Source: Caecitellus pseudoparvulus
Lineage: Eukaryota; Protista; Bigyra: Bicosoecida
Reading direction: 5' to 3'
Assembly (NCBI GenBank): GCA_965644315.1
Contig: CBFFRQ010000043.1
Coordinates: 496,001 to 560,000, forward strand
Length of the DNA: 64,000 bases
The notes below the pieces were generated by a model, which did no database searches, was not told the DNA's origin, and saw only the letters and a program-made list of their open reading frames with translations. Both the position numbers and the translations under genes were made by a program. Positions within the stretch are counted from its first letter, which is position 1. Each line of letters opens with the position of its first letter. Positions 29,920 to 50,721 of the stretch are shown here, piece after piece.

Positions 29920-30397
29920 AAGTTGCTGGGTCAAGCGGGGAACGAGGCACACTCTGCGTGGACCACGTGCATGATTCGCCCTGCGCCGTCGCGAACCGCA
30001 GAGAGTCGCACGCTGGAACATGCCCAGGGCTGGCGACCGTGTCACAGACCTCCCGAGCATGGTGCGCGCGAGGTCGCAAGCTGCACAGTCAGGATGCGCC
30101 AATGTACCACTGTTTCCATCATACTGCGCTGCTTGGCGTTCTGGGAGCAAAGCTCGAACGAGTCTACGGACACGAGAGCGCTCGATATTTCACCCCCCCC
30201 CACAAAGAAGTGCATGAAGCGGCACTGCAGTGGTTTGCTAGGACCAAGACACTGATACCAGCCATAAAGACGGTGTCTCGGCGCACGGCACGCCCCAGCA
30301 CTGTCTGGCCTTGGCACAAGGTGTGCGCACTGCGAATCGAAGCCTGACCAAGCGGGCGAGGAGGCCAGACGCTGACGGCACTGCGGGAAAGGGCGCA

Positions 30398-33300
30398 ATG
30401 GCGGGGGCAGTGCAGCTGACTGTGATGCGCCTCTTGCAAGAGGTGAATCCTGAGTTGGATCATGATGTCGACGTGAGAGCGCGCTGCACAGCTGCAGGCC
30501 ACGCCCGTGCAGGACGACCAACTTCCGCACTTTCGCAGCGTGCTCGGGAGGCGCTGGAGGAACTCGCCGGAGAGGGAGAGGCACAGCTGCACTGGTTGAT
30601 GGAGTGTTTGATTACGGCCATGGGCAACGATGACCTCCCGCACATCCGACGGGAAGCTGCCATCATGCTGCTGGACCCGTTCATCCTGGAGCTGCAGGAG
30701 GCGGGCCACCTTGTGGAGCCATGTCTGCAGAGCTTCATGTCATGCCTGGAGTCGCCGGTGCCCAGCTTGCGCACTTGCGGTGCGCAAGGCTTCCTGGACT
30801 TACATGACGCCCTGGACCAGCTGCCAGAGTACCAAGCAGTGCTGGAGGACCTCTGCTCTTGCATCGTGCAGGCCAGCGTGGAGTGGGTCAAGAGTGACTA
30901 CGGCACAGCCCCTGGAAAGGAGGACTTCGAGCTGACCAGCAAGCAGACGGGCGCGCTGCTCTTGCTGAATTTCATGGTGGATGAGGGGCTGCCCCTCATC
31001 GAGCGCCCCTGGCTGCTGCCTGCCGTGCTGCAGCTGTGCATCCTGTCGCCGCAGGAAGCTGCCTGCTTCCCCCACCGGTCCTCCGACATCATCAGCACAT
31101 CCCAGGCGACAGACCAAGCACGGGCACTGGTCACTCGGTACGGAGCAGCCCTTCCCGGTGTGCAGCTGCATGTGGGGGCTGAGCCCGCCAGCACCGCAGC
31201 GGGCGTGACCACAGTCGGCAGCTCCTGGTTGCGGGCTCCCGCTGCGGTGGCTGACAGCGTCATTTTCACCACCGGCCAGCTGCAAGGCGAGGGCCAGGTG
31301 AAGTTCACTCGCACGCCACGCGTGCTGGCGACGCTGCTGCTGGGCCACGCCTTCAGCCTCGCCCTGGCCGGCGAGCGTGACTGGCGAGACACCATTCTCC
31401 GCACCTTCGCCCAGGTTGTGGTGGGGCAGTGGTTGTTTGGGGAGGGCACAGATGCCGTGTCTGTGCGCAAACGCGAGGCCGCCCTGTCCCTCCTCAGCTT
31501 CATCGGCCGTGAAACTGAGACAGCCATCGACGAGGGGGAGGAGCCCCCCGAGTCTGTCTTGCTGATCCCCCTCTCCCTCCCACGCATTCTGCGGCTGACC
31601 TTCCCCGCCTACGAGCCCTCCTTCATGGTGCGGTCTGCCGCGGTACTGGCGCTGCAGGGCCTCATCCCTGTTCTGAACGGTCTCCTGCGTCAGGCAGACG
31701 GACTGCCCGCCACGCCGCAGAACAAGGAGGTGGAGCTGGTCAAGTGCAAGTACCACGCTGGGCTGGATTTGGAAGGCGCGGTGCTGCGCCCTCCTGCCCA
31801 GCCAGATACGCAGCAGTGTGTCTTGCCAGGTCCCTGGGCCTCTTCTGCCACCCCTGACTTGCTGCTGCTCCTGGGAGGTGAAGACCGCGCCCGAGGGTGG
31901 GTGTCTGGCCTCCCCCCCATGCCAGCTTGGATGAAAGGCTCGCCAGTGGACCCCACCACCCTGGTCGTCGACTTCCTCAGCGGCATGATGCGAAGCGGCG
32001 CTGAAGAGGCAGCTGCGCTTACCGACACACAAGCCACTGAAGGCGGTTCCGCTGCACCCCCTCCACCTCCGCCCACGGCGCAGCCCGATGCCATGCAGGA
32101 GGCTGTTCCTGGCTCCCCTGAAGCGCATTCTCCTGGGGGCTGGGACACGTTGGAGGGCTGTGGCATGGACGAAGGCGATGACGCGTTTGATGAAGACGTG
32201 CCGGGCGGTGATGAAGACGCCCCGCCTGCAGAGGAGGATGCTCCCGTGGCAGCAGCGCCACCTCCTCCAGGAGGGGCGGCTGCTGGCCCCACCAGCTGCA
32301 GCAGCGACCCATACGGGTCCCCAGCTGCTCGCGGGCTCGTGCAAGGGGCTCTTCCCCAGAGTCTGCCAGATCTGCGCGTGTTCGCGTGGGATGCCTACAA
32401 CTCAAAGTACGCACTGCCCCCTGGGCCGGAGCTGGCAGCAGTGCTGGGCCTGGACACGAGCGACTCTGCCATGGTCCGCCATGGTGCCGACCCGAATGGA
32501 GCCCTTGCCTTTGTCTTGGAGAAAGACGCACAAGCCGCTCTGAATCTGCCGGACTCTGAGAAGTGGAGTGTGGACATTGACCCTGCAAGTGAGCCATACG
32601 ACGGCAGCTTCGAGCAGCAGATGCTCTGCGCCTTGCTCGTGAACAACCAGCCCGACTGCCCGCAGTACTGGGCTCAAAGCATGATGGAGGCAGATGCAGG
32701 CACCTTCCGAATGCTGTTCCGGGTACCGTACCGTCTGCGTGTGGCGGCAGTTGCGGCAACCTTGAACGTTGCATTGCCCGGGCTGGTGTCTGCACTGGGA
32801 GCTGTGGCCAAGCACCGCCGCATGTCTCAGGGTGCCATTGTATCTGCATGGCTCGGATGGCATGCGGCGAAAGGCAGCGGTGGCTTCACCGCTGCCTCAA
32901 GCCTGCCCTCCCTGCCAGTTCTGGGAGATGGTGTGGAAGATGACGCGTGGGCTGTGGAGGCAGACCCATCAGCATCCAGTGCAGCGCTGGCGGCAGCTTG
33001 GATGGCCAAAGCCACCCTGCGTGCTGCGGGGGCCGAGCGCATGCTGACCACCAGCAGCTCTGAGCACGCCCTGCTGGCGCGCCTGGTGGGTGCCCAGACC
33101 ATGCAGGGTCGGTGGCTGAACGGCTCCGTGTGGAGCGCAGTCGGCACCATTCGCAGCGCACACCGCCACACAGTGTACGGCGACGTCGTGCAGAACGTCA
33201 TGGCCAGCGTGGGCCTGGAGCCGACGCTATACAGCATCCCTTCCGTATCACGGGGCGTGCTGGACGCCCTGCTGCCCCTCTGGCACCGCATGCTAGCTCC

Positions 33301-36280
33301 TCTGGAGGCCGCCAGCGCCTTCACCCCCGACGCACTGTCCGTGGTGGGGCGCCTGTTTGGCCCCATGCCTGGCGCACCAGGTGTGCAGGGCAAGGCGGCC
33401 GAGGCACTCCTAGGCCACTTCGCCAGCGCGGGGGACGGCACCATGCCCGTTGGCAGCCCGCCCCCCACACCGCTGGCCCTGCGCCACGTCATGTCTTGCA
33501 TCTCCAACACTGTCCAAAGCATGGCGGAGGTGCCTGCTCCGCTGGATGCTCAGATCCTCTCCCTGGCCATCACGACCTGCGAGTGGGCCCTGCTGTGTCT
33601 GCTGTCCAACCCCCTGGCTGGCAGCGCATCTGCGCGTGCGACGCAGCGTAACCCTTGGGAGGGCTTCACCCTGCTGCCTTCCTCAGCCCTGGCCACGATG
33701 ACTGACCAGGAACGAGAAGCATACAACGCTGACCTGCAGTGCGCCAAGGACAAGGCGGCTCTCCGCGGCTACGCGACAGCCTGCTCGTGGCTGCTGCCCC
33801 GCACGCTGGCGCTGTACGTGGCCTGCTCCACCTTGGACATGCTGAGCTACCTCATTGACACGTGGGGCAGCAGCCTGGGGGACCACCTGACGGACCCCAT
33901 CACCACTTGGCGCCTCTTTCGTGTCCTGGCCCTGGGCGTGAATACGTATGAGCAGCAGGGCGCATCGGCGGTCCTGCACCGCTCTGTGGCCCCCGTCGCT
34001 TCTGCATTACTGGCTGCCGGAGGCGTCACGCCACTGGCGGGATCCGGGACGGCGCAGCCTGCCGCAGGTGGCAGTGGCGCGGCCGCTGGCCATGCTACTG
34101 CAGGTCTACGAGGGAAGCTGGACGCGTGCCCCGATCTGAGCACCGCAGTGGGGCAAGTGGCTGCCCTGGTGCAGAATGCCAGGGGTGTGGGGGTGAGCCT
34201 CATGCCCGCGCCCATGACCCCTGCCGACTACAATGCCGACCTGGGCTACGGCGCCAGCCTGTCGGAGGAGGAGACACGCATCGGGTCCGCTGAGGAGGAG
34301 GAGTCCGATTTGAAGGACTCCTCTGGGCTGCAGGAGATGCAGGAAGCGATGGAGAGTGCCACGGCGGCATGGGCTGACTCCCTGCCCTTCGCACCGGACA
34401 TGGATGACCAAGAAGTGATGGAGGTGGGCGAAGCGTCCGCTTCTTCCGGCTGGTTTGCCCTGGGGCACGGTTCCCTGCACTCCGGCTCCCTGGCTGTGCT
34501 GGGGAACATGCTGCGGCACGCCCCCCAGTGTTTCTCTCCCAGCGCCCTCCACGAGGCTGCCTGCAAACACCTCGACAACACCCTGGACAGCATCGCTCGC
34601 GCGTTAGTGCCCTCCATTGCCCAGGATGCGCCAGTGCCGCCGCTCGCAATGCGGTTCGTTGCCCGGACAGTGCGCCGCGCGCAAGCGCTGGTGACGGGGG
34701 AGAGCTCGTGGTTGAACAGCAACGTAGGCAGTACGGGTGTGGCGGAGCACATGCTGCTGCCCTGTGCCTCCGACACGCTTCCCCCCTGCCCACTAGCCTT
34801 GCTTATGGCTATCGGGCACATCCCGCCGCACTGCCTGCAGCCTGACAGCACAGACCTCCCTCTTGCCTGGCCTGCAGAGGATCCCACTGGAGCGAGTGGG
34901 GGTGAAAACGCCCCGGCCACCCCCCGCCTGCCTTGCTGCCCCCCTGGCACCCACTTGGACTTGGTGACTGCCCTCGCACGCGACATCGCCTCGACAGCCG
35001 CCCGGTCAAGCATTGCTTTCTCCCGCAAGGCGCTGGATATTGGGGAAGCCGGCGAAGTGCCGCTGCATGTGAACAGCATGTGGGCAGCTGCCATGGCAGT
35101 GCGGTCGTTGGGCAAGCAGCTGGCTGGCAGCGTCGTCCCAGCGGACTGGGCGGCAGCCATGCCACCACCCGGCACCCCAGGCTTCTACACCGAGGAGCGA
35201 GGTGACGGCACCGAATCTTTCCGTGTGTTTAGCCTGCCAGCAGCGCTCGTCCACGCGCTGCGCATGGGGGATCCGCGGTCGCCGGGTGCAACGGCGCTGG
35301 CTCAGGGGCACCACCCAGCCCTGCGCGTCATGCCGTACATCTGGAGTCCTGATCACGACCACATGGTGATGGATGGGTCCACTAGCTCTGACGCCCCCGT
35401 GGAGTTTTCAGAGGATGACCTGCAGCAGGTGCTGCTCGGCCCGCCTGGCATGCAGGCAGTGGAAGAGAGCCACGGACAGCTGGCGGCGCAGGGCCTGGCC
35501 ATGGTGCTCATGGAGGCCATGCACCACAGTGGCGGCAGTGTCCCTTCCGCAGAGGAGGCCAGCCAGATGGTACAGCATTGGATGTTGGCGCACGCGCTGC
35601 CAGAGCACAGCACAGGCACCCCGCCTGCAGAAGTCTGGCTGCGAACGCTGATTGTCTGCCAGCTGCCCTCAGCCCTGGAGAACACTGTGCAGGGTGTGGC
35701 TGCCCTGCTCCAGAGCACATTGGAGCCCAAGGCTGCTCCTAGCGCGCCCGTGCGTGCGCTGGTTCACAGCATCTGGCTGCCGTGGTGTGCGGCCGTTCGG
35801 TGCGCTCCCTTCGTAGATGCCATGGACGAGCGCCACGCTGCGCTGTCAGCTCTGCTGCACGCTGCATGCCTGGTACCCGACGTGTGCCTTCCTGAGGAGC
35901 TAGGGTTCACGTTTGCGCCTTCAAGCAGTGCCTCTGCCGAAGCTGCGCATGCAGGTGTGTCTGTGCAGATTGCGCGACTGCAGGCGCTGTTGTCTGCACT
36001 GGCACGAGCCCAACTCAAGGCGCTTCCACCAGCGCCCTGGCTCAGTGGCTCAAGGCGGCGAGCACGAGTGCCAGCAGAGAATGTGGCCAGCATTGCCAAG
36101 TTGGCGAGGCGTGCGTTGGGCAGTGTCAGGGCTGCCATTTTCAAGTGCGTGGACGACATGGTGGCTGAGGGGCGGGTTCCAGAGCCACTTGTAGGGAAGG
36201 CAAGGGACGCCGTGTGGGCTGCCATCATGGAAGCGATCCCTCCCCGCCTGCTCAAGGTCGCCGCAGCTTTGATTCTGTGA
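30398..36280 (+). CDS. Large HEAT-repeat protein, divergent transportin-1/karyopherin-beta2-like
   Basis: About 1960-aa ORF with collinear transportin-like blocks: STLDMLSYLIDTWG, SLAVLGNML, VNSMWAAA, ALENTVQGVAAL, WLPWCAAVR...DERHAALSAL. Confidence 0.6.
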   Translation: MAGAVQLTVMRLLQEVNPELDHDVDVRARCTAAGHARAGRPTSALSQRAREALEELAGEGEAQLHWLMECLITAMGNDDLPHIRREAAIMLLDPFILELQEAGHLVEPCLQSFMSCLESPVPSLRTCGAQGFLDLHDALDQLPEYQAVLEDLCSCIVQASVEWVKSDYGTAPGKEDFELTSKQTGALLLLNFMVDEGLPLIERPWLLPAVLQLCILSPQEAACFPHRSSDIISTSQATDQARALVTRYGAALPGVQLHVGAEPASTAAGVTTVGSSWLRAPAAVADSVIFTTGQLQGEGQVKFTRTPRVLATLLLGHAFSLALAGERDWRDTILRTFAQVVVGQWLFGEGTDAVSVRKREAALSLLSFIGRETETAIDEGEEPPESVLLIPLSLPRILRLTFPAYEPSFMVRSAAVLALQGLIPVLNGLLRQADGLPATPQNKEVELVKCKYHAGLDLEGAVLRPPAQPDTQQCVLPGPWASSATPDLLLLLGGEDRARGWVSGLPPMPAWMKGSPVDPTTLVVDFLSGMMRSGAEEAAALTDTQATEGGSAAPPPPPPTAQPDAMQEAVPGSPEAHSPGGWDTLEGCGMDEGDDAFDEDVPGGDEDAPPAEEDAPVAAAPPPPGGAAAGPTSCSSDPYGSPAARGLVQGALPQSLPDLRVFAWDAYNSKYALPPGPELAAVLGLDTSDSAMVRHGADPNGALAFVLEKDAQAALNLPDSEKWSVDIDPASEPYDGSFEQQMLCALLVNNQPDCPQYWAQSMMEADAGTFRMLFRVPYRLRVAAVAATLNVALPGLVSALGAVAKHRRMSQGAIVSAWLGWHAAKGSGGFTAASSLPSLPVLGDGVEDDAWAVEADPSASSAALAAAWMAKATLRAAGAERMLTTSSSEHALLARLVGAQTMQGRWLNGSVWSAVGTIRSAHRHTVYGDVVQNVMASVGLEPTLYSIPSVSRGVLDALLPLWHRMLAPLEAASAFTPDALSVVGRLFGPMPGAPGVQGKAAEALLGHFASAGDGTMPVGSPPPTPLALRHVMSCISNTVQSMAEVPAPLDAQILSLAITTCEWALLCLLSNPLAGSASARATQRNPWEGFTLLPSSALATMTDQEREAYNADLQCAKDKAALRGYATACSWLLPRTLALYVACSTLDMLSYLIDTWGSSLGDHLTDPITTWRLFRVLALGVNTYEQQGASAVLHRSVAPVASALLAAGGVTPLAGSGTAQPAAGGSGAAAGHATAGLRGKLDACPDLSTAVGQVAALVQNARGVGVSLMPAPMTPADYNADLGYGASLSEEETRIGSAEEEESDLKDSSGLQEMQEAMESATAAWADSLPFAPDMDDQEVMEVGEASASSGWFALGHGSLHSGSLAVLGNMLRHAPQCFSPSALHEAACKHLDNTLDSIARALVPSIAQDAPVPPLAMRFVARTVRRAQALVTGESSWLNSNVGSTGVAEHMLLPCASDTLPPCPLALLMAIGHIPPHCLQPDSTDLPLAWPAEDPTGASGGENAPATPRLPCCPPGTHLDLVTALARDIASTAARSSIAFSRKALDIGEAGEVPLHVNSMWAAAMAVRSLGKQLAGSVVPADWAAAMPPPGTPGFYTEERGDGTESFRVFSLPAALVHALRMGDPRSPGATALAQGHHPALRVMPYIWSPDHDHMVMDGSTSSDAPVEFSEDDLQQVLLGPPGMQAVEESHGQLAAQGLAMVLMEAMHHSGGSVPSAEEASQMVQHWMLAHALPEHSTGTPPAEVWLRTLIVCQLPSALENTVQGVAALLQSTLEPKAAPSAPVRALVHSIWLPWCAAVRCAPFVDAMDERHAALSALLHAACLVPDVCLPEELGFTFAPSSSASAEAAHAGVSVQIARLQALLSALARAQLKALPPAPWLSGSRRRARVPAENVASIAKLARRALGSVRAAIFKCVDDMVAEGRVPEPLVGKARDAVWAAIMEAIPPRLLKVAAALIL

Positions 36281-36398: not shown

Positions 36399-38432
36399 TC
36401 AAGGCGGTGGACGTGGATAGGCACCGCCGGTGGACTTGAGTACCACGGTGTTGGTAAGCAGGCCAGGTGACTCCTGCCCCATCAGCTTGCTCATGTCCGC
36501 CAAGCACTTCGAGCGGGTCGTCATGGCCCCTGGCTTGGTGAACTGGCCTGATGAATCAGGGGAAATCCGACGGTACGGCGCATCCAGCCACATGCTGGCG
36601 TGGCCGCTCTCGGCTGCAACGACAAAAGCGAAGCCGATGTCGTCACACTGGAACACGCGGTCCACGTATTCCCACAGCTCGTCGTAGTGGGAAGCGTACT
36701 GCACGGCATAATGCACATGGAACAACGAAGCGCCGACCAGGGCAAAGTTGAAAGCTTTCTGCTCTTTGTGCACTGATCCATGGAAGTACGTCCACTGCTG
36801 TGCCTCATCCTGCACGCCTGCACGGGCAATGAAGCCCAGGTGGCGCTGCGGCGAAGCGAGGTGGCTCCACACAGCGTCGCGGACAGCCTCCGCTGCAAAG
36901 AGCATGTCGTCATCCATGAGCATGATACTGGATGTTCGCACGCCTTGCAGGAGGTACTGCGGACTGAATCTGTTTTTCCAAGCGTTGCGCTCAGCCACGA
37001 TGGATGTGATCGGCTTCCAGGCAGGGCACTCCGGGAAGGCAGTCACAGGCAAGGGCGGGGAGTCCACATCATTGGAAATTATGAGCACTCCAAGCACTTC
37101 AGGGAGAGAGCAATATCGCTGTACCATTCGTGCCACCAGTTTGGGGCGCTTGTACGTCATAGTGACCAGCGTCACGCCTTGTCCCAGAGCAAGGCGCACC
37201 TTCTGTTCAGCTTCGGAGGGCGCCAGTGCCTCCTCCCCCGCATGGGGAGTCAACGGCAGAGGGCCAACTGGGCTAGCAAATAATGAAACCCCATCGGACA
37301 CCTGTGGCTTGTTCTCAGTCGCGGCTAGTAGGCAAGCAGCATGCTTTGGCAGCAGCTGTGCGCCCCACACGTCTTGGAGTTGGCGGGACATGAGAGCCGC
37401 ATCCGACAGAACACTCACCCCCGCCAATGGCCGCACAGCAGCTTTGTTTTCCAGCATTCGCTCCACCCAGCTCGTTCTCCAGCTGTGCGGTGGCACATGC
37501 CGGGAATCTGGGAGCCGCCAACCTGTTCTCGCGATGAGGGGCAGCTGGGACAGTATCGAAGCGTTGTTCAGGCACGCCTGCGGGGCCTCAGCAACGCCCT
37601 GTATAGCTGGAGCTCCCTCGCTTATGCGATGTCCGACGGCAAACATCTGTTTGTGGTCGCTGGCGCGCTTGGCCCCTGCAAGCGAGCTCTTTTCCTGGGC
37701 GGGCAGGGCCTTCAGCAGGGCTTGCTCAGCGACGCCATGAGTTTGATCAGGGCGGCTCAGAGAAGGAAGTGACAGCACCCATGCTGCCCTTGACGTACTC
37801 TGCACGACCTCGTGCAGGAACGCTCCTGGGTACAACTCCGTGTGCTCCGCCCAGCCAGCACGAACCATGTGAACGTCTACATGTCGTGCAGCGGCTGGAT
37901 GGGATGTCAGGACGTGCTTGAGCCTGAGAAGAGACCAGTCACTGGTATCTGCAAGAGCAACCCACGTAGCTGGTCCACCCCACGAAGCTACCGTCCGCAT
38001 GACCCGCTCTGCATCTGACAGCTTGCTGTGGATGCCTAGCCGGAGCTTTGCTTCACCGCCACCGCTACAATGGACGTCTCGCACCAAATGCACGACAAGT
38101 TCACGATTTCCCACAGAAATCAGGTGAAGGGATTCGTTTTCTGCCTTGTTGCGTCCCACAGGGACGAAGGGCTGATTCCCTGGTGCGCATCTCCATGCCT
38201 CCTTCACCGGAGATGCATCCGTCAGATCGCGACAAGGCGCTTGAAGGCTGCCGCGCAGGCGGGCTGAAGAAAGAAGCCCCGTGCTAACAAGAGTCATTGC
38301 CCCGAGGAGAAAAGCGCCAAGGGCGATACTGGGCGACGATAGGAGGCTTCGGGTTCGTGGTGAACACCCAATTCCGCAGAGAGGCTGGAGTTTTCTCCAC
38401 CTCCAGCACCACGCCCGGGGAGAGTTCAGCAT
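36399..38432 (-). CDS. Type II membrane glycosyltransferase A: degenerate GT49-like domain plus intact GT64 (EXTL2/EXT C-terminal-like) domain
   Basis: N-terminal TM helix. GT64 motifs TLVTMTYKR, NRFSP, IMLMDDD, PQRHLGFIAR, FNFALVGASLFH, YVDRVFQCDDI, RSKCL. Upstream GT49-like remnant WGGPATWV...LYPGAFLHEV...WVLSLPS. Confidence 0.8.
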   Translation of the reverse strand: MLNSPRAWCWRWRKLQPLCGIGCSPRTRSLLSSPSIALGAFLLGAMTLVSTGLLSSARLRGSLQAPCRDLTDASPVKEAWRCAPGNQPFVPVGRNKAENESLHLISVGNRELVVHLVRDVHCSGGGEAKLRLGIHSKLSDAERVMRTVASWGGPATWVALADTSDWSLLRLKHVLTSHPAAARHVDVHMVRAGWAEHTELYPGAFLHEVVQSTSRAAWVLSLPSLSRPDQTHGVAEQALLKALPAQEKSSLAGAKRASDHKQMFAVGHRISEGAPAIQGVAEAPQACLNNASILSQLPLIARTGWRLPDSRHVPPHSWRTSWVERMLENKAAVRPLAGVSVLSDAALMSRQLQDVWGAQLLPKHAACLLAATENKPQVSDGVSLFASPVGPLPLTPHAGEEALAPSEAEQKVRLALGQGVTLVTMTYKRPKLVARMVQRYCSLPEVLGVLIISNDVDSPPLPVTAFPECPAWKPITSIVAERNAWKNRFSPQYLLQGVRTSSIMLMDDDMLFAAEAVRDAVWSHLASPQRHLGFIARAGVQDEAQQWTYFHGSVHKEQKAFNFALVGASLFHVHYAVQYASHYDELWEYVDRVFQCDDIGFAFVVAAESGHASMWLDAPYRRISPDSSGQFTKPGAMTTRSKCLADMSKLMGQESPGLLTNTVVLKSTGGAYPRPPP

Positions 38433-38702
38433 GGCGGGTTAAAGAAGGTAAACAGAACAGTCTTCCGAATAGCTGAGCACCCCCCGCTGTTTCCTCCCAT
38501 GCGGATGCTTGCCTTGTTGGAAGGTGTGCAAGGTGCGCTGCGCAGAGCAGTTACTCAAAAACCTGAGTCAACACAAGCAGGAGCTGGTGCAGAGCAGCCA
38601 GGCAGTCCAGCAAGCGAGACAGAGACACGCTTGTTTGCACCCCTCATTCATTGACTGAATTGAGCACACGCACATTGACGATTTTGCTGAGAAGCAAGTG
38701 GC

Positions 38703-41700
38703 TCAAGCCGCTTCACTGGCCTTCTGGAGCACCACAACCGTGAAGGCTGCAGCATCAAGGAGGCTGAAGTGCGACCTAGACTCCTTCACAGCCATGCCCT
38801 GGGGGCCACTCTGGAGAACCTGGAGCAGGGCAGAGCCTGACTGTATGAAGGAGCGCGGGGACGACGGGTCCTCACTCGAGCGCTTGTGTGTTGAGGGGTT
38901 CTCCACACACTCGAGCAGGTCGGCAAGGTCCTCAGGCCTGACAGCAGCGCTGGAACCAGAAGTTTCTGGAAGAAGAGGAAGGGAGGAAACAAGAATGCCC
39001 CCCGGGGCGATGCTGCCCAGAACCTGCGCCAGAACGGTGCAGTGCAGCGACCCCGCGGTGTCGCCCCACATGAAGGTGCCGACCCTCACAGACGCGAGAG
39101 AGGGAGGCACCTGCACGAGCTCCTCTGAAGGCGCGGACAGTGCCTGCTTTGACGCCTGCCCGTGGCCAGAGCGGAGCCGCGGGGTGCCTGCCGAGCCACG
39201 GTCAAGCTGCGGGGGTAACGTGGCCACAGGGCGCTCGAGTTGGGCAGACCAGCCCAGACCCCCCCAACCTACGGCATCCACATCAAATACCCTCACAGCT
39301 TGGACCTGTGAGGGTTGTTCTTTAGCATGTGAGCCGCCTAGGACAGGCAGGAGCAGGCGCAGGCGCTGTGCCAACATGCCACCGCTGACGCTGGCACTGG
39401 CAGACGTTTGGGGCGTGCCAAGCGACGCTCCGCGCGAAAACACTGCGATCTCCACGCCACCCATGACGTTGGGGGTGGTGGATGCCATGGACGCAAAAAG
39501 GGCGTCTTGAGCCGCCACCAGCACGGCCCAAGACCGCTCCTCCAAATCCAGCGAGTCCGTTGCATGAGCAAGAGAAGCCAGGTTTGGCGGCCGCGCAGAC
39601 AACAACGCCACGCTGTCCACCCACCTCTGGGAGTCGGCAGGCAGCTGGCGGGCCGTCTCAGGGTGTTCCACCAACCCGGGCATGTAGCCACATGCCCGCA
39701 GCACATCTGTGTTGAGGCTGGTGTTGGCAGGCAGGGTGGGAGGCGGGCCCCACACCACGCCGGGGCCTGCCACAGTTGCTGCAACAGCAGGGTGCAGGGG
39801 CAACGCAGCGAAGGTCTTGCCCCGGGTGAGCAGGAAGGAGTTTGCGGGGCCCAGGGGAGACCAGAGCCCGCGCCCTGCAGCCAGCATGGCGCATGTCGAG
39901 ATGGCGGTCAATGGCACGGCCGGGTGAGTCCAGCTGGTGTAGGCAGTGAGTCCACCAACTGCCCTCGCGGCAGCCGCGGCGAAGGGCGGCAGCAGCCGCT
40001 GGCTGTGTGTGTGGGACACAGGGGCCACCCCCGTCGAGGTGCCAGGCGGCAGGAAGCCGGGTGCCACAGCTCGCAAGAGAGACGTCAGCTGGTGTCCTGC
40101 CAGCTGCCCCCTGGAGAAGTGGGCACACAGGGGGGGGACACACAGGGGGGCAGTGGCCTGGGTTGGCAGGGCTGTCTGGGCCTGGACGAGCCAGGCGGGG
40201 GCTTGGGGAGCGTGGGTGATCCACGTTGTGGTTTGAATCACCCGCGTCTGCACAGCTGCGCCAGCGCTGATGGACTGGCGCCAGATGGTGTCCTCTGCCG
40301 GCACGGGCAGCTGGAGGAGCCAGTCTGTGGGGTGTGCAAGCACCACCAGCGGCACGCCTTGGCGAGATGCGGCGACAGACAGCCACACGTCGGCCATGTT
40401 GGGCGCCAAGAAGTCATCCAGGGAGATGCTCAGGACGGGGGGTGTCGTGATGCGCATGGCTGCCACGCCGGTGCCGACAGCTTGGACCGGCACGTCCAGG
40501 GGCAGGGAGTCCAGCACCCTGGCATTGAAGACCCTGGCGGTGCGGTAGGGGCCAGGTGTGCGTCGGAACGTTCCACCGTGCATGGAGGTGACGGCAGTCC
40601 CACCGTACCGCAGTTGCCCGTACAGACTGCGCCTTGCATAGTTCGGCGCGTACCAGACGTCGTCATCTGCAGTGAAGTACCACGATTCTTGAGAGGCACT
40701 GCCCAGCCCATAGAACTTCCCGGCGTCGCCCAGGTCTCCGTGTGGCGTGCTGGAGTCCAAGACCGGGTGCAGCCACGCTGCTCCCTGCAAGAACCGTGGC
40801 ACGGCACCATAGCCATTCAAGTACACAGTCAGTTGGTCCACTTGGCCAGCCAGGGATGCCACTGCATGTTTGAGCTGCCCCACCCGGCGAGGCTGCGACG
40901 CCATGCCAACATGGATGGGGCCGGCCGCGGCGCCACACAGCACGGCGGCGGCCGTGCCGTCCACAAACGGCTGTGAGGCGAGCTGCTGCTCGACAGATCG
41001 TGTGACAGCAACCTGCAGAGTCTGGGGTGGAAGGTGCTGCACTGCGCACACCAAAGCAGCATCCAGGGGAGGGCGTACCACAGGCAGGCCGGCGATTTGA
41101 GACTGACGGCGAAGGTTGGTGTACGTGACTTTGGCCTGGTCTGGGCCGACCCCCGGACCACCTGTCATGCGGGGGGGGTACTGGAATCCACATGCCTCGC
41201 CGAACCGCCGGCCCAGCACAAACCCGCCGTGCCGTGCGAGCAAGTCCCAGTCCTCCTGCACAGCGGCGGGGGATACCTCCATGCTCGGTAGCCCTGGAGG
41301 GGAAAGGAGGGACCTTGCAGAGCTTGGGATGCCCGCAAGCGGCTCAGCAGCCAGAGGCATCACCCCTATCCCCACCTCTGTCCAAGCAGTGCTGTGTATG
41401 CTGCCTGCTGGGCTGCGGATGTGGCTGGGGCGAACCGCCTGCTGAGCCTTCGCTTGCGCCAGCAACCACGAATCCCTAGCTCTGGAGAGGAAAATGTCAG
41501 CAGGGCGTACGAGGTCTGGCACGACTACCAAAGCTGCAGCTGACTCCTCCACCTCCAGTGCTTGCATGGCTGCATGCAGCGCCCAGGCTGCTGCAGACAC
41601 AGAGGGAGCCGCACCGCCCGCCCCGCCCGCTCCGGCGCTTGCAGGCTCGCGAGCGAGCTCGGGGGCACAGATGTAACCCCATCCCAGAGATCGCACCCAC

Positions 41701-42575
41701 TCCCCGACGCGGTCTGCCTTGTGGGAGTCCAGGAGGGCTGCCAGCTGCTCCAAGCCACTGACGGTTCCATGCGAGGCGTGGTCAGGTCGCTGCGGCACGG
41801 CAGGCTCTTTGCACGCAGCTGAACGCGGCTGTGCCACCGTATCCAGCACCGTAACTGAATGTATGGTGTGCGGGGAGTACAGCACTTCTGCCTCAACATC
41901 CCTCAACAGGCGAACAGTGGTGTCAGGGTCACGCTGGGTGCGCACAACGACGAGCGAAACGCCCCATGCACCCTCCGCTGCCGCCACCAGGCTGCGCTGC
42001 CTTGCAATGTGCTCATGCACTCGCTGAGAGAAGTCGCCCAGGTGGGCATACTGCCAAGCACTCTGCTCCGCCATGGCCTGCTCGTAAGCCACGACAGGGG
42101 TGGCGTGCAGCGTGTCGCCGGGCTGCACTGCCCACCCAAATGATGTGACAATCACTGCTCTGACCAAGTCCTGCACGGCTCCGCCAACAGCAATGTCCAG
42201 AAGTATTAGCACAATGGCGAAGAAGGCGCATGGCACCGCCACTTTCTGCCACGTCCGCTTCCCAGGACCCCGTGGCTGGCGCAAAGTGCTGCCTCGACTG
42301 CCGGCACCAAGCTCAGGGCTGCTTGCAGGAGCCGGACCCGGCCGCCCCCGATACCGCATGTGACCATGTTGCATGCACGTGTGTGCACCAGGGCCTTCCA
42401 TCAGCCGCGCAGTGTGTTGCGGGACTGCGGCGTGGGTGAAAGTGCTGATGGACGGGCGGGGCCGAATTCCGCAAGCATGTCCCCGCGCCCCCGGGTGGCT
42501 GCAGAAGGTCGCCGGACACCGTGCGGGAGAGAGGCCTTGGTGTGGAGAATGGCAAGGGGGCTGCTTGTCATCCAT
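38703..42575 (-). CDS. Type II membrane multidomain glycosyltransferase C with KfiA/PmHS-type GT45 domain; true start may be 42359
   Basis: TM helix VAVPCAFFAIVLILLDIAV. GT45 block at about 40916-40279: MASQPRR, SLAGQVDQLTVYLNGY, DLGDAGKF, YFTADDDVWYAPNY, SMHG, VGTG, SLDDFLAPNMADVWLS, DWL. Confidence 0.8.
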   Translation of the reverse strand: MDDKQPPCHSPHQGLSPARCPATFCSHPGARGHACGIRPRPSISTFTHAAVPQHTARLMEGPGAHTCMQHGHMRYRGRPGPAPASSPELGAGSRGSTLRQPRGPGKRTWQKVAVPCAFFAIVLILLDIAVGGAVQDLVRAVIVTSFGWAVQPGDTLHATPVVAYEQAMAEQSAWQYAHLGDFSQRVHEHIARQRSLVAAAEGAWGVSLVVVRTQRDPDTTVRLLRDVEAEVLYSPHTIHSVTVLDTVAQPRSAACKEPAVPQRPDHASHGTVSGLEQLAALLDSHKADRVGEWVRSLGWGYICAPELAREPASAGAGGAGGAAPSVSAAAWALHAAMQALEVEESAAALVVVPDLVRPADIFLSRARDSWLLAQAKAQQAVRPSHIRSPAGSIHSTAWTEVGIGVMPLAAEPLAGIPSSARSLLSPPGLPSMEVSPAAVQEDWDLLARHGGFVLGRRFGEACGFQYPPRMTGGPGVGPDQAKVTYTNLRRQSQIAGLPVVRPPLDAALVCAVQHLPPQTLQVAVTRSVEQQLASQPFVDGTAAAVLCGAAAGPIHVGMASQPRRVGQLKHAVASLAGQVDQLTVYLNGYGAVPRFLQGAAWLHPVLDSSTPHGDLGDAGKFYGLGSASQESWYFTADDDVWYAPNYARRSLYGQLRYGGTAVTSMHGGTFRRTPGPYRTARVFNARVLDSLPLDVPVQAVGTGVAAMRITTPPVLSISLDDFLAPNMADVWLSVAASRQGVPLVVLAHPTDWLLQLPVPAEDTIWRQSISAGAAVQTRVIQTTTWITHAPQAPAWLVQAQTALPTQATAPLCVPPLCAHFSRGQLAGHQLTSLLRAVAPGFLPPGTSTGVAPVSHTHSQRLLPPFAAAAARAVGGLTAYTSWTHPAVPLTAISTCAMLAAGRGLWSPLGPANSFLLTRGKTFAALPLHPAVAATVAGPGVVWGPPPTLPANTSLNTDVLRACGYMPGLVEHPETARQLPADSQRWVDSVALLSARPPNLASLAHATDSLDLEERSWAVLVAAQDALFASMASTTPNVMGGVEIAVFSRGASLGTPQTSASASVSGGMLAQRLRLLLPVLGGSHAKEQPSQVQAVRVFDVDAVGWGGLGWSAQLERPVATLPPQLDRGSAGTPRLRSGHGQASKQALSAPSEELVQVPPSLASVRVGTFMWGDTAGSLHCTVLAQVLGSIAPGGILVSSLPLLPETSGSSAAVRPEDLADLLECVENPSTHKRSSEDPSSPRSFIQSGSALLQVLQSGPQGMAVKESRSHFSLLDAAAFTVVVLQKASEAA

Positions 42576-48119: not shown

Positions 48120-50721
48120 TCAGGACCCTGGATCGGGCCCCGTGTCTGGGTGGGGAGAGGGCGTGGCGTGCGGGCGGCCATGCACGGTGAGCTGGCGCCG
48201 GGTGGAGAACAGGGGGACTCCGCGGTGCCACCGAACCAAGGCCTGCACACACTGTCGTAAGTCTGCAGCGGATGCGGGGTAGCCTGGGACTGCGGTGCTG
48301 AGCGTGGAGTTGCCGTGCAGACTGCACAGTGGACTGTGCGTGAGGCGCCACTGGGCTTGCGGGCGAAGGAGAAGCGGAGGCAAGCCGCCCTGCGCCGCTG
48401 CTGCAAAGCTCACAGCCAAGCCCATACACTTGCTAGGCTTGAAACCCATGCCCCTCATCTGCGAGGCAGTCGCGCTCAGGGTGCTGGGGTGGCGTGGTGT
48501 GTGGCAGGCGCGCAGGGCTCACCTCCTCCGTGTACGCTGCGAGCCTCCCCAACCAAGCCGCATGGACCATGGACCCCGACGCATCCACCATGTTGTACGA
48601 AGCGATGGTACTTGCCGTGCCCTCACACTGTGCGCTTGCATGGGGGTTTGTGCGCGTTGGCAGGTGAAGGTGCAGCGCAGAGGTGCCAGTGTGCTGCATC
48701 GGGGAAGCGAGCCAGGTGCTCGCGAGGAGCTTCACCGCGGAAGCCGGCAACTTGTCTGGTCGCCGTAGCAGTAGAACTGCATCGCTTCTGTGGAGGCGAG
48801 GGGGGGGGGGTGTTGCGTTGCGAAGGCTCACAACACTGCGTCAATGCACGGAGCATGCACGATTGAGCTTGTCACAGCGAAATACGCGCAGCACGCACTG
48901 GAGTGGTGGAAGGCCCCGAAAGCTGAAACGGGGCACGCCAGCTTGGGCTTGGTCCACAAAGTGCAATGGCTGACCCAAGGGGCAAGCCTCGACGGCAGGC
49001 TCGATCATCTGCTGCGGACAAGCTGCAACGGCGACGACTTGCGAAATGCTTGGCATGCTGCAGTAGTGCTGAAGCAGGGACCGCATTTCTTGGGAGCGCA
49101 CACACAACTGCAAGACCAGGACCACCCCGCCTGGGGCACGTAGCGCATCTCCAGCGCGGGGCACGGCGGACTGCACGCCGCGCTGCACGCGCCGACCTTC
49201 GACAAGCACTGTCACGGCTGACAGAAACGAGCTCCATGCTGGAAGGCGACGGGCAGACTGCAAGATTTCCTCGTCCAACGCCTGCCATCCGAAGGGGCGG
49301 TACGTCTTCACTCCATAGGTGCCCAGAACATGGGAGGCTGCGCTGTCCCAGGCAGGAATCACGCTCGGCATGTGCGGGCGCTGCCGCCCGACACTCGTCG
49401 GCACATCCACGACGCTAACGTGGGGAAGAACTGTGAAGGAGTACCCTGCAGCAAACAGATGGGCCGTCCATTGGGCTTTGTTCATGCCCCTGTCCACAAA
49501 GGCAGGGTCCGGTGCGGGCGCTGCACGGGGCACAATGAGGTACGGTTCAAAGCTGGGAGCAAACGGCACGGTGAACGCGACACGGCCTCTCTCTGACAGC
49601 CACCGTCGGTAGTTCGCTGGCATGTATGCGCGTGGAAAGTACGGGTGCATGGGCCCAATAGCCCCGCTCGCCACTGCCTGCCAAATCTCGGCGTGCGACG
49701 GCGGTGCCGGTACGCGAGTCACATCCATGGACGCTTCCAGCGCTATGACAACGAAGGCATGCAACCCCTTGCATGGTGCGACGTGTGCATGGGGATTCCT
49801 TGCGCCCGCCAAGAAGTCGTCCATGTCCAGGCCTCGGAAGCCTGGCACGTGAGCCTCCCCCGCCTGCAAGTCTGCCTCAGCTTCAGCCAGTGCAGCGGAA
49901 AAGTGCGCCGCTTCGTGCGTCAGGTGCAAGTCCGCATCGATGACAAGCACCCAGGGCGTCTGTGCCAGCCGTTGGGCAATCGCCCGCATGAGATTGATCG
50001 GGTACACTGCCTCCTGCGCGAGCTCCAGCCCCACCGGCTGCACCAAGTGCAGCGCGAGGGAAGCTGCCGCGCTGCCCCACTTCCCCACAGTGTGTAGGAG
50101 GCGGCGCACGGCGCGCCCTGAGCCGGGCACGAACACCACAGCAGTGACTGGGCCCTTCCAGGTCTCGCACAGTCTCAGCAGGTGCGGCAGCCTTTCAGCA
50201 CTGAGGTGTGTGGCCAACGTGACGTTCCAATGCACGCCAGCCGCACCCGACGCGAATGACACGCCGGGTCCAACGTACACCAGGGGAGACACCACGAAGT
50301 CGGCAGCGTCCCCCGCCTTTTCTACCCATGGCGGCCTGGTGGCAAGCGCTGCCTTTCCGCCGCTCTCCAGCAAGGCCATGAGGAGCGCGGCGCTTGGGGA
50401 GGAAGGCGCGGCTGAGGGGGCATGCACTCCGGCAGCGTCGCATGGTACGAAGCAGCGCGATCGGCCACGGAGGAGAGAGGGGACGCTCCGGGACTCGTCA
50501 CCATATGTGCAGAGAGTGTCATTGTCCGCCTCGCCTGTTTGTCCTCCCTGCGTCCATGTTTGTGTGGTGCCGTCTGCCGTCGACCAGGCGGCGGCAGCCT
50601 CAGCCGATGCACAGGAAGCGGCCAAGCACAGCGCCACCCACAAACCTGCCCAGCAGCGTGGCACGCCGTGGCCACCTTGCTGGCACTGCCCCCTTTGGTG
50701 TTGACGCGCAAGCTGGCACAT
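48120..50721 (-). CDS. Glycosyltransferase B: GT49 (LARGE/B4GAT1-like) domain plus degenerate GT64 domain; 3 exons
   Basis: GT49 motifs VTLATHLSAERL, WKGPV, YPINLMR, VIDAD, FEPYLIV, FVDRGMNK, YSFTVLP. Introns at 48898-48788 and 48522-48459 join three ORF pieces into a complete GT64-shaped C-terminus (RFS...SDAVLLLRRP...SYNMV...KCMGLAVSF...RQCV...GVPLFST). Confidence 0.8.

What the first reader, a model, noticed from the sequence alone, without database searches (positions are those of the whole stretch)
40279..40916. Bacterial capsule-type GT45 (KfiA/heparosan synthase) domain in a eukaryotic membrane protein
Seen: MASQPRR...SLAGQVDQLTVYLNGY..VP.FL...DLGDAGKF...YFTADDDVWYAPNY...SMHG...VGTGV...SLDDFLAPNMADVWLS...HPTDWL. 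Known: this order matches E. coli K5 KfiA and the C-terminal domain of Pasteurella heparosan synthase (S.P.R, Q.D...LN/DG, D.GKF, DDDI.YP.DY, HG, LGTG, VD..FS, NWL). These are alpha-1,4-GlcNAc transferases for heparosan capsule, and GT45 is regarded as essentially bacterial. Inference: a horizontally acquired domain, now with a type II anchor, supplying the same chemistry as the GT64 domain in adjacent gene A.
Basis: partly seen in the sequence, partly recalled or inferred. Interest (0 to 1): 0.85.

Follow-up and report, generated by a model that had tools for sequence, protein, structure and literature searches.

The report
Bacterial-type GT45 sugar transferase in protist
A marine, non-photosynthetic single-celled eukaryote carries, in an ordinary chromosomal setting, an intact and selectively maintained copy (plus one paralogue) of a sugar-adding enzyme family otherwise characterised only in bacterial capsule synthesis, apparently gained long ago from bacteria or their phages and refitted with a membrane anchor.

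Summary
Window 40278-40919 (minus strand) encodes a GT45 glycosyltransferase domain. By sequence it matches only Pasteurella heparosan synthase 2 (E 3e-21) and E. coli KfiA (E 1.7e-10) among solved structures. A model built from a 30-sequence alignment gives the same two as best folds (Z 27-30 and 25); the next best is GT64 EXTL2 at Z 17.

All family-invariant residues are kept: the DDD metal motif, His666 and the probable Asp nucleophile D729. "MASQPRR" is not a protein start. The domain is residues 553-766 of one uninterrupted ORF of about 1218 aa. Its layout is a short basic tail, one N-terminal membrane helix, a degenerate GT-A domain, GT45, then about 500 aa of unknown fold.

The host is a eukaryote: the genome has tandem 18S-5.8S-28S arrays, and the window also holds MAD1, BRF1 and Hsp70. 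Codon GC matches the neighbours. A 99%-identical marine strain shows 23 synonymous against 9 non-synonymous differences, none non-synonymous in GT45. A second full-length paralogue lies on another contig.

In trees both copies fall in one small clade with bacterial and tailed-phage proteins, which fits one old transfer followed by duplication. Heparosan-type chemistry and a functional link to the adjacent GT64 gene are not shown. The scan had noted this same stretch and gene before, but not on other DNA.

The parts
38703..42359 (-). Gene C, one uninterrupted coding frame (about 1218 aa from Met73; the open frame runs up to 42575)
   Evidence: ORF list. 99%-identical product P0001 on an independent marine metagenome scaffold with the same neighbours. 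23 synonymous vs 9 non-synonymous differences from codon 73 on. Metatranscriptome contigs lie between 38668 and 42444 with no joints.
42243..42359 (-). Short basic, Pro/Gly/Arg-rich N-terminal tail (aa 73-111), predicted cytoplasmic
   Evidence: Translation. Basic residues (KRTWQK) directly precede the helix. The start codon is inferred: Met59, Met68 and Met73 are all possible. RNA-library contigs reach 42444 but not Met1.
42174..42242 (-). Single transmembrane helix / signal anchor (aa 112-134, VAVPCAFFAIVLILLDIAVGGAV)
   Evidence: It is the only Kyte-Doolittle peak above 1.8 in the protein (mean 2.73 over 19 aa). The paralogue has one at the same relative place. The aligned bacterial two-domain relatives begin directly with the GT-A domain.
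40986..41963 (-). Degenerate N-terminal GT-A domain (aa 205-530) with long low-complexity inserts
   Evidence: hhalign to the bacterial domain that precedes GT45: probability 81%, E 1.2e-5. AF2 core strands/helices pLDDT 65-82. Two-domain match to PmHS2. Conserved polar residues are lost. Constraint is relaxed: 7 synonymous vs 8 non-synonymous codons in aa 73-554.
41502..41528 (-). Remnant of the N-domain DXD motif: VVVPDLVRP, where bacterial relatives have L-x-D-D-V-R-L
   Evidence: Alignments A4/A8: both Asp are >=90% conserved in bacteria. The window has D-L and the paralogue D-T.
40956..40967 (-). FVDG inter-domain linker motif
   Evidence: Shared with the paralogue and with multi-domain relatives (F-x-D-G just before GT45).
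40278..40919 (-). GT45 catalytic domain (aa 553-766)
   Evidence: PmHS2 E 3e-21, KfiA E 1.7e-10. AF2 pLDDT 85-95. KfiA Z 25.1, rmsd 3.2 A over 198 of 204 residues; PmHS2 Z 27-30. 4 synonymous and 0 non-synonymous differences between strains.
40659..40667 (-). DDD (aa 637-639), the metal/UDP-binding DXD motif of GT45
   Evidence: Invariant in 36 of 36 aligned family members. Verified by translation.
40389..40391 (-). Asp729 in NMADVW, probable equivalent of the PmHS2 Asp569 nucleophile
   Evidence: It is the only invariant Asp outside DDD in the family alignment. Preprint 10.64898/2026.10.20.760405 reports Asp569 as almost fully conserved across CAZy GT45. The residue mapping is inferred, not read from coordinates.
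38706..40199 (-). C-terminal about 500 aa of unknown fold (Ala/Pro/Leu/Thr-rich linker aa 793-947, then about 340 aa)
   Evidence: No Pfam hit at E<=10. hhalign to class I and FkbM methyltransferase domains of relatives gives probability <1%. AF2 pLDDT 33. Only the last 34 aa resemble the paralogue (E 8e-4). Still constrained: 11 synonymous vs 1 non-synonymous.
36399..38432 (-). Adjacent gene A with a GT64 domain (context, not shown to be functionally linked)
   Evidence: Pfam PF09258 E 6.2e-30 at aa 421-654. Same strand, 270 bp downstream of gene C. A DDD stretch is visible in the translation.

Best explanation
Window 40278-40919 encodes a catalytically intact GT45-family retaining glycosyltransferase domain. 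It is embedded in a single-exon, roughly 1218-aa type II membrane protein of a marine heterotrophic eukaryote.

Proposed history. The gene descends from a bacterial-style two-domain enzyme (N-terminal GT-A plus C-terminal GT45, the layout of Pasteurella heparosan synthase). It entered this lineage once, long ago, from bacteria or their phages. It then duplicated (a second copy lies on another contig), took on host base composition, and gained an N-terminal tail with a signal-anchor helix. The N-terminal GT-A half has lost the conserved polar residues of its bacterial counterparts and is probably a non-catalytic scaffold. GT45 keeps the DDD metal site, His666 and the Asp729 nucleophile position.

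Proposed mechanism, in part inferred. The protein is anchored in the ER/Golgi membrane with the catalytic part in the lumen. It binds a UDP-sugar through Mn2+/DDD and transfers the sugar with retention of configuration, giving an alpha linkage, onto a glycan acceptor. UDP-GlcNAc is the most likely donor by analogy with the only characterised members.

Shown: family membership, intact motifs, eukaryotic chromosomal setting, purifying selection, presence in RNA libraries, prokaryotic affinity, one clade for both copies.
Inferred: topology and compartment, donor sugar, acceptor, inactivity of the N-domain.
For: - Family: only PmHS2 and KfiA match in the PDB by sequence. By fold: Foldseek E 1e-22; VIA Z 27-30 for PmHS2 and 25.1 for KfiA, against 17 for the next family.
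- Motifs: all 12 invariant family columns are kept in both copies (coordinates checked).
- Eukaryotic host: tandem 18S-5.8S-28S arrays; MAD1, BRF1, Hsp70, a kinase and GT49 in the same window; GPKOW next to the paralogue; GC3 0.71-0.76, like the neighbours.
- Independent assembly: the same gene order on a marine metagenome scaffold.
- Selection: 23 synonymous vs 9 non-synonymous differences overall and 4 vs 0 in GT45. By my reading of codon positions, most natural variants in the coding part fall on third positions.
- Expression hint: RNA-Seq metatranscriptome contigs at >=99% identity on 38668-42444, with no splice joints.
- Origin: both copies sit in a clade with SH-aLRT 95-97 together with bacterial and tailed-phage proteins (contexts). 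Holding the two copies together as one clade gives a tree 60 lnL units better, p-AU 0.985.
- Distribution: the family is found across Actinomycetota, Gemmatimonadota, Pseudomonadota, Chloroflexota, Bacteroidota and others. No closer relative than 46% identity was found in 1.84 billion representatives apart from its own strain.
- Architecture: N-domain homology and its degeneration; single TM helix.
Against: - No activity, localisation or glycan data exist.
- Tree backbone support is weak and both eukaryotic branches are long (about 0.8-1.4 changes per site), so the exact donor lineage is open.
- The RNA-library contigs cannot exclude DNA carry-over, and I could not lay a silent control stretch.
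- The N-domain is called inactive from missing conserved residues only.
- The mapping of D729 to PmHS2 Asp569 rests on invariance, not on a superposition I could inspect.
- The database may under-sample protists, so 'no other eukaryote' is an absence of evidence.
- The dbCAN GT45 model was not run.
Confidence: 0.75

Rival explanations
1. The GT45 domain is an alpha-1,4-GlcNAc transferase acting on GlcA-terminated chains. With the organism's EXT-like GT47/GT64 enzymes it builds a heparosan-like (GlcA-GlcNAc)n polymer, duplicating or complementing the adjacent GT64 gene.
For: - As far as I know, the only characterised GT45 enzymes (KfiA, PmHS1/2) do exactly this; the PmHS2 activity is described in preprint 10.64898/2026.10.20.760405.
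- GT64 EXTL2/EXT1-2 are the next-best folds (Z 15-17).
- The genome has a UDP-glucose dehydrogenase, 8 GT64 hits and 5 GT47 hits, including a GT47+GT64 open frame.
- The GT64 gene lies 270 bp away on the same strand.
Against: - Identity to PmHS2 and KfiA is low, and the family has 2379 clusters with many architectures (GT2, GT4, methyltransferase and radical-SAM fusions), so specificities are probably diverse.
- The nearest relatives are stand-alone phage head-module proteins and an operon with sulfo- and methyltransferases, not capsule loci.
- The protein's own N-terminal GT-A half, which is the GlcA-T in PmHS2, looks dead.
- The paralogue has no GT64 neighbour.
- Heparan-modifying enzymes were not searched for in the genome.
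Confidence: 0.2
2. The domain is an active retaining transferase with a different job: modifying a glycoprotein, glycolipid or other surface glycan, possibly with a sugar other than GlcNAc.
For: - Clade-mates P0090 and L039 are about 235-aa stand-alone enzymes placed between the Mu-F-like head protein gene and, in L084, the capsid gene of tailed phages. This placement suggests a non-polymer role such as virion protein glycosylation (my inference).
- Relatives show wide architectural diversity.
- Earlier unchecked notes describe many unusual glycosyltransferase genes elsewhere in this genome.
Against: No characterised GT45 has such an activity. Nothing in the sequence identifies the acceptor.
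Confidence: 0.35
3. The gene reached the eukaryote through a giant virus rather than directly from bacteria or phages.
For: - Large viral contigs (402 kb, 139 kb, 123 kb in IMG/VR) and a 377-kb high-GC contig carry GT2-GT45(x2)-methyltransferase proteins of similar length and domain order.
- Their GC (0.58-0.65) is like the host's.
- An earlier unchecked note reports an endogenous virophage in this genome.
Against: - In all three trees these viral domains fall outside the small clade that holds the eukaryotic copies.
- The high whole-protein scores of P0002-P0005 come from having 2-3 GT45 domains each, not from closer similarity.
- No viral hallmark genes flank either copy.
Confidence: 0.12
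4. Artefact or relic: bacterial contamination, an assembly chimera, or a decaying pseudogene.
For: The gene has no introns. Its relatives are prokaryotic.
Against: - The gene lies at about 536-540 kb on its contig (window = contig positions 496001-560000) among typical eukaryotic genes.
- It has the same neighbours in an independent metagenome scaffold.
- Codon GC is native.
- The frame is open for 1290 codons and synonymous changes far outnumber non-synonymous ones.
- All catalytic residues are intact in both copies.
Confidence: 0.02

Closest known systems
Pasteurella multocida heparosan synthase 2 (PmHS2; PDB 8vh7, 8vh8, 8viw), a GT2 + GT45 bifunctional polymerase
   Same: - Best sequence match for the GT45 domain (E 3e-21).
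- Best fold match over both domains (Foldseek E 1e-22; VIA Z 27-30).
- Same order of an N-terminal GT-A domain followed by GT45.
- DDD motif and the invariant Asp are kept.
   Different: - The N-terminal half here lacks the second Asp of its DXD and other conserved residues, so bifunctionality is unlikely.
- Relative domain orientation differs in the model (rmsd 13-18 A).
- This protein has a eukaryote-style N-terminal membrane anchor, long low-complexity inserts and an extra 500-aa C-terminal region.
- The host is a eukaryote.
E. coli K5 KfiA (PDB 5z8b), a stand-alone GT45 alpha-1,4-GlcNAc transferase
   Same: - The GT45 domain superposes at Z 25.1, rmsd 3.2 A over 198 of 204 residues.
- Sequence E 1.7e-10.
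   Different: - KfiA is a soluble single-domain protein of about 240 aa in a capsule gene cluster and works with a separate GlcA transferase.
- Here the domain is internal to a large membrane protein.
Uncharacterised prokaryotic and viral GT-A/GT2-GT45(-methyltransferase) multidomain proteins (e.g. P0046, P0013, P0083, L010, P0002)
   Same: - Same domain order, and the same FxDG linker before GT45.
- Similar total length in the large forms (about 900-1470 aa).
- P0046 and P0083 group with the window in the trees.
   Different: - Their partner domains keep their own conserved residues; those with a recognisable GT2 or methyltransferase domain score clearly in Pfam.
- The aligned two-domain ones begin at the GT-A domain with no N-terminal extension.
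- No methyltransferase signal could be found in the window's C-terminal region.
Eukaryotic GT64 enzymes (EXTL2, the C-terminal domains of EXT1/EXT2/EXTL3), the native eukaryotic alpha-HexNAc transferases
   Same: - Next-best fold after GT45 (Z 15-17).
- Retaining GT-A with DXD, type II Golgi topology, and the same kind of linkage chemistry.
- A GT64 gene is the immediate neighbour.
   Different: - No significant sequence similarity: GT64 proteins do not appear in the PDB sequence search.
- Pfam GT64 hits gene A but not this protein.
- Different evolutionary origin.

Membership tests
CAZy GT45 | Significant sequence similarity to characterised members (KfiA, PmHS1/2 GlcNAc-T domain) | tested here: met
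   phmmer vs PDB: PmHS2 E 3e-21, KfiA E 1.7e-10, and no other family at E<=10.
CAZy GT45 | GT-A fold closest to solved GT45 structures | tested here: met
   AF2 model pLDDT 85-95 in this domain. KfiA Z 25.1 / TM 0.86; PmHS2 Z 27-30; next family (GT64) Z 17.
CAZy GT45 | DXD (DDD) metal/nucleotide motif | tested here: met
   DDD at aa 637-639, invariant in 36 of 36 aligned members.
CAZy GT45 | Conserved Asp at the PmHS2 Asp569 (proposed nucleophile) position | tested here: met
   D729 (NMADVW) is the only invariant Asp outside DDD. The preprint reports near-universal conservation of Asp569. Equivalence is inferred from invariance and alignment to PmHS2 'MADIY'.
CAZy GT45 | Match to the dbCAN/CAZy GT45 profile above threshold | not tested
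   No dbCAN library among the tools. Pfam-A and NCBIfam hold no model that hits it.
CAZy GT45 | Retaining alpha-GlcNAc transfer from UDP-GlcNAc | not testable with these tools
   Needs an enzyme assay.
Bifunctional heparosan synthase (PmHS type) | Catalytically competent N-terminal GlcA-transferase GT-A domain (DXD plus base) | tested here: not met
   The domain is present, but DD is replaced by D-L (D-T in the paralogue), and the conserved D, H and HGK of bacterial counterparts are lost. No Pfam GT2 hit even at E<=10.
Bifunctional heparosan synthase (PmHS type) | Produces (GlcA-GlcNAc)n polymer | not testable with these tools
   Only supporting context: UDP-glucose dehydrogenase, GT47 and GT64 genes are present in the genome.
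Type II (Golgi/ER) membrane glycosyltransferase | Single N-terminal signal-anchor helix with basic residues on the N-terminal side and the catalytic domains C-terminal to it | tested here: met
   One hydropathy peak (2.73) at aa 112-134 after KRTWQK. The paralogue has the same arrangement. Compartment and orientation not testable here.
   hhalign probability 0.3% and 0.1%. No Pfam hit at E<=10. AF2 pLDDT 33, uninterpretable. A very diverged relic is not excluded.

The most novel reading that the evidence does not exclude
This is the first eukaryotic lineage shown to use a bacterial-type GT45 enzyme in its secretory pathway, and it uses it to make a heparosan-like or other GlcNAc-alpha-linked acidic polymer alongside its EXT-like (GT47/GT64) machinery. 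That would be a glycosaminoglycan-type pathway outside animals, assembled partly from horizontally acquired capsule enzymes, with a pseudo-glycosyltransferase partner domain analogous to those proposed for animal polymerase complexes.
Probability: 0.15. Interest if true: 0.7.

Novelty: new variant of a known kind. Interest (0 to 1): 0.45.

Why it matters
GT45 has been characterised only in bacterial capsule synthesis (KfiA, PmHS1/2). A full-text search found no paper placing it in a eukaryote.

Here it is a maintained, duplicated and membrane-anchored nuclear gene. That makes it a clear worked example of a prokaryotic two-domain glycosyltransferase being 'eukaryotised': it gained a signal anchor, acquired inserts and lost one active site.

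It gives glycobiologists a natural GT45 that is already adapted to the secretory pathway. It also gives a testable entry point to the surface glycans of a marine protist that is detected in several marine metagenome studies.

It also widens the known range of the family: giant-virus-sized contigs and phage head modules carry it too. If the product were heparosan-like, it would bear on the origin of glycosaminoglycan synthesis outside animals. Without that, it remains a well-supported but fairly ordinary case of gene transfer.

Tried and rejected
- Pfam and NCBIfam on the domain and the whole protein gave nothing for GT45. Pfam at E<=10 on the N- and C-terminal parts of both copies gave nothing.
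- ESM-Atlas feature search: no usable hit for the C-terminal part; weak GT-A-type leads (score 0.91) for the N-terminal part.
- C-terminal domain as a methyltransferase: hhalign against class I and FkbM domains taken from relatives failed. AF2 with a 3-row alignment gave pLDDT 33. Local phmmer/hmmsearch against all fetched proteins and loci found nothing.
- Word-index homologue searches were almost blind here: the whole protein found only its own strain, the GT45 region found 2 hits, and alignment A8 found none.
- I first read P0002-P0005 as a distinct closest group. That was rejected because their high scores are sums over 2-3 GT45 domains each.
- The AU test with the mixture model on 105 rows did not finish and one script call was lost. 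The test was redone on 52 rows with LG+G4.
- Organism identity: earlier notes of an endogenous virophage and a 'marine flagellate' suggested Cafeteria. The published assemblies are 34-36 Mb at 70-71% GC in 170-396 contigs, against 30.6 Mb in 215 contigs here and about 65% GC in this window. Identity was not confirmed and is left open.
- A metagenome scan for close orthologues found only relatives at 30-38% identity.
- Residues that determine donor sugar could not be taken from the PmHS2 preprint text.
- No spliced model was needed.
Full report
**1. What is there**

The minus strand of the window carries one open frame of 1290 codons, 38703-42575. Against all PDB chains, this stretch matches only:
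- Pasteurella multocida heparosan synthase 2 (8vh7/8vh8/8viw): E 3e-21, query residues 28-241, i.e. window 40278-40919.
- E. coli KfiA (5z8b): E 1.7e-10.

Pfam-A and NCBIfam have no model that hits it. An exhaustive HMMER pass over 1.84 billion representative proteins finds 2379 clusters at E<=1e-3, so this is a large and mostly uncharacterised family.

In a 36-sequence alignment the window keeps all invariant columns: DDD (aa 637-639), His666 and Asp729 in 'NMADVW' (coordinates verified). A recent preprint on PmHS2 proposes Asp569 as a covalent nucleophile and reports it as almost fully conserved in CAZy GT45 (10.64898/2026.10.20.760405). Asp729 is the only invariant Asp outside DDD and aligns with PmHS2 'MADIY', so I take it as the equivalent. 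This mapping is an inference.

**2. The gene as a whole**

'MASQPRR' is not a start. That Met lies in the conserved first strand of the domain. The likely start is Met59, Met68 or Met73. RNA-library contigs reach 42444 but not Met1. Natural variants between 42271 and 42376 fall on second codon positions by my reading, so that stretch looks little constrained.

The layout, from the N-terminus, is:
- A basic tail.
- One hydrophobic helix, aa 112-134. This is the only hydropathy peak, and the paralogue has one at the same relative place.
- A GT-A-like domain, aa 205-530.
- An FVDG linker.
- GT45, aa 553-766.
- An Ala/Pro-rich linker.
- About 340 further residues.

The N-terminal domain is homologous to the domain that precedes GT45 in many bacterial two-domain proteins (hhalign 81%, E 1.2e-5). 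An AlphaFold2 model of aa 190-800, built on a 30-row alignment, has pLDDT 85-95 in GT45 and 65-82 in the N-domain core. Fold comparison gives:

| Structure | Result |
|---|---|
| PmHS2, over both domains | Foldseek E 1e-22; VIA Z 27-30 |
| KfiA, GT45 domain | Z 25.1, rmsd 3.2 A over 198 of 204 residues |
| EXTL2 (GT64) | Z 17 |
| EXT1-EXT2 heterodimer, aligned part | Z 15 |

The N-domain has lost residues that are at least 90% conserved in its bacterial counterparts, and it carries long inserts:
- DD has become D-L (D-T in the paralogue).
- A conserved Asp, a conserved His and the HGK motif are gone.

It also evolves under weaker constraint: 7 synonymous vs 8 non-synonymous codons in aa 73-554. 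I read it as a pseudo-enzyme scaffold.

The C-terminal region gave no answer. It has no Pfam hit at E<=10. hhalign shows no similarity to the methyltransferase domains that end many relatives. The model was uninterpretable (pLDDT 33). It is nevertheless constrained: 11 synonymous vs 1 non-synonymous difference.

**3. Host and authenticity**

- The assembly is 30.6 Mb in 215 contigs and has tandem eukaryotic 18S-5.8S-28S units.
- It has no light-harvesting proteins.
- Its UDP-glucose dehydrogenase gene matches in separate pieces, consistent with introns.
- The window also encodes MAD1, BRF1, Hsp70, a protein kinase and GT49 and GT64 proteins.
- Third-position GC of the gene (0.71; 0.76 in the domain) matches its neighbours.
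- An independent marine metagenome scaffold carries a 99%-identical gene with the same neighbours.
- From codon 73 on, the two strains differ by 23 synonymous and 9 non-synonymous substitutions plus one in-frame 3-codon repeat change. None of the non-synonymous changes is in GT45.
- The stretch occurs in many marine metagenomes.
- Short contigs from two RNA-Seq metatranscriptomes lie on 38668-42444 at 99% identity or better, without joints. This suggests transcription of an unspliced mRNA but is not proof.

Contamination and pseudogene readings are therefore rejected. The species was not identified. A Cafeteria lead did not fit published assembly sizes and GC.

**4. Paralogue**

A search of the whole assembly finds one more GT45 domain, in a 937-aa open frame on contig C42 (L005:382-3195).
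- It shares the same layout: tail, single helix, degenerate GT-A, FxDG, GT45, and the same C-terminal end motif.
- It is 35% identical to the window copy in GT45.
- All catalytic residues are intact.
- It lies between a GPKOW gene and an oxidoreductase, not next to a GT64.

**5. Origin**

Labelled relatives come from many bacterial phyla at 35-40% identity and from IMG/VR contigs. I built three trees: FastTree on 229 rows, IQ-TREE C20-PMSF on 106 rows, and LG+G4 on 52 rows. All three put both eukaryotic copies in one small clade (SH-like support 87-97; 95-97 in two of the three). The clade also holds:
- P0046, a GT-A+GT45 protein in an operon with a sulfotransferase and a methyltransferase.
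- P0118, in a bacterial chromosomal context.
- P0090 and L039, tailed phages with the gene order terminase, portal, Mu-F, GT45; in the P0090 loci a capsid gene follows.
- P0056.
- In two of the trees, an Actinomycetales MAG protein, P0083.

(Tree calls: 47, 48, 79, 86.)

Holding the two eukaryotic copies together as one clade gives a tree 60 log-likelihood units better, with p-AU 0.985. The simplest history is one transfer from the prokaryotic world, then duplication, with enough time for full amelioration and 65% divergence between the copies.

Giant-virus-sized contigs also carry the family. These are L010 (402 kb) and the contig of P0002 (377 kb). They share a neighbourhood of thymidylate kinase, DUF3228, CinA, HAD_SAK_2 and PARP, and they encode GT2-GT45-methyltransferase proteins. 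Their domains lie outside the eukaryotic clade. Their high whole-protein scores come from multiple GT45 domains per protein.

No close orthologue was found elsewhere. Given how few protists are sampled, this is weak evidence for lineage restriction.

**6. Function**

Shown: an intact GT45 catalytic apparatus under purifying selection in a membrane-anchored protein.

Inferred: lumenal orientation, UDP-HexNAc donor (most likely GlcNAc), alpha linkage, glycan acceptor.

The heparosan reading has some context in its favour. The genome has UDP-glucose dehydrogenase, five GT47 and eight GT64 matches including an EXT-like GT47+GT64 frame, and a GT64 gene lies 270 bp away. Against it:
- The family's architectural diversity.
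- The phage and operon contexts of the closest relatives.
- The dead partner domain.
- The lack of a GT64 neighbour at the paralogue.

I give the heparosan reading about 0.2.

**7. Verdict**

This is a new variant of a known enzyme family: eukaryotic, anchored, with a decayed partner domain and an unexplained C-terminal region. A full-text search found no paper placing GT45 in a eukaryote. Interest is moderate.

Earlier notes of this scan covered the same gene (s1-653093, s1-652609). Nothing was noted on other DNA.

Noticed in passing
G000:C42:337472-340285 (L005:382-3195): A full-length paralogue of gene C (937 aa) with the same layout and intact GT45 residues. It is flanked by a GPKOW splicing-factor gene and a GFO/IDH/MocA oxidoreductase.
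   Followed up: yes
L084:8001-8720, L085:1650-2369, L039:3070-3768: Stand-alone GT45 proteins of about 235 aa sit in the head-morphogenesis module of tailed phages, after terminase, portal and Mu-F-like protein; in L084/L085 a capsid protease/major capsid gene follows. They might glycosylate virion proteins. These are among the closest relatives of the eukaryotic domain.
   Followed up: partly
L006:8001-12416 (P0002) and L010:4318-8118: High-GC (0.61-0.65) viral or virus-like contigs of 377-402 kb share a neighbourhood (thymidylate kinase, DUF3228, CinA, HAD_SAK_2, PARP; also NAD-ligase and PTH2 in L006 and UDG in L010). They encode giant multidomain glycosyltransferases: P0002 has two GT2-like domains, two GT45 and two methyltransferase domains; L010 has one GT2, one GT45 and one FkbM methyltransferase domain. 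P0002 has a sulfotransferase gene next to it.
   Followed up: partly
L086:417-4216: Prokaryotic operon: Sulfotransfer_1, a GT1-like gene, a class I methyltransferase, then the GT-A+GT45 protein P0046. This suggests a sulfated or methylated glycan product for this branch of the family.
   Followed up: no
window 41600-41630 (aa about 316-324 of the 1290-aa frame): In-frame length polymorphism of one Gly-Gly-Ala unit in a (GGA)n-like run between the window and the metagenome strain L001.
   Followed up: partly
window 48841-50721 (-) and 36399-38432 (-): A GT49 (LARGE/dystroglycan-type) domain protein and a GT64 protein lie within 12 kb of the GT45 gene. Together they form a loose cluster of glycan-synthesis genes in a eukaryote.
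   Followed up: partly
G000:C89:79784-82984: A 1592-aa open frame with GT47 (E 2e-47) and a weak GT64 match (E 4e-4), i.e. EXT-like. Three other frames of 1510-1595 aa have strong GT64 domains (C18, C89, C54).
   Followed up: no
G000:C81:462535-506238 and C91:18239-19866: Tandem rDNA units about 8.45 kb apart with an 18S of only about 1697 nt.
   Followed up: no
window 30311-36280 (+): A 1989-aa open frame with no Pfam match at E<=1e-4. Its homologue is also present next to the GT64 gene on the metagenome scaffold L001.
   Followed up: no
L001, upstream of 1358: The metagenome scaffold has a run of N just upstream of the called GTG start. The N-terminal 70 codons could therefore not be compared between strains, and the true start codon stays unsettled.
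   Followed up: partly
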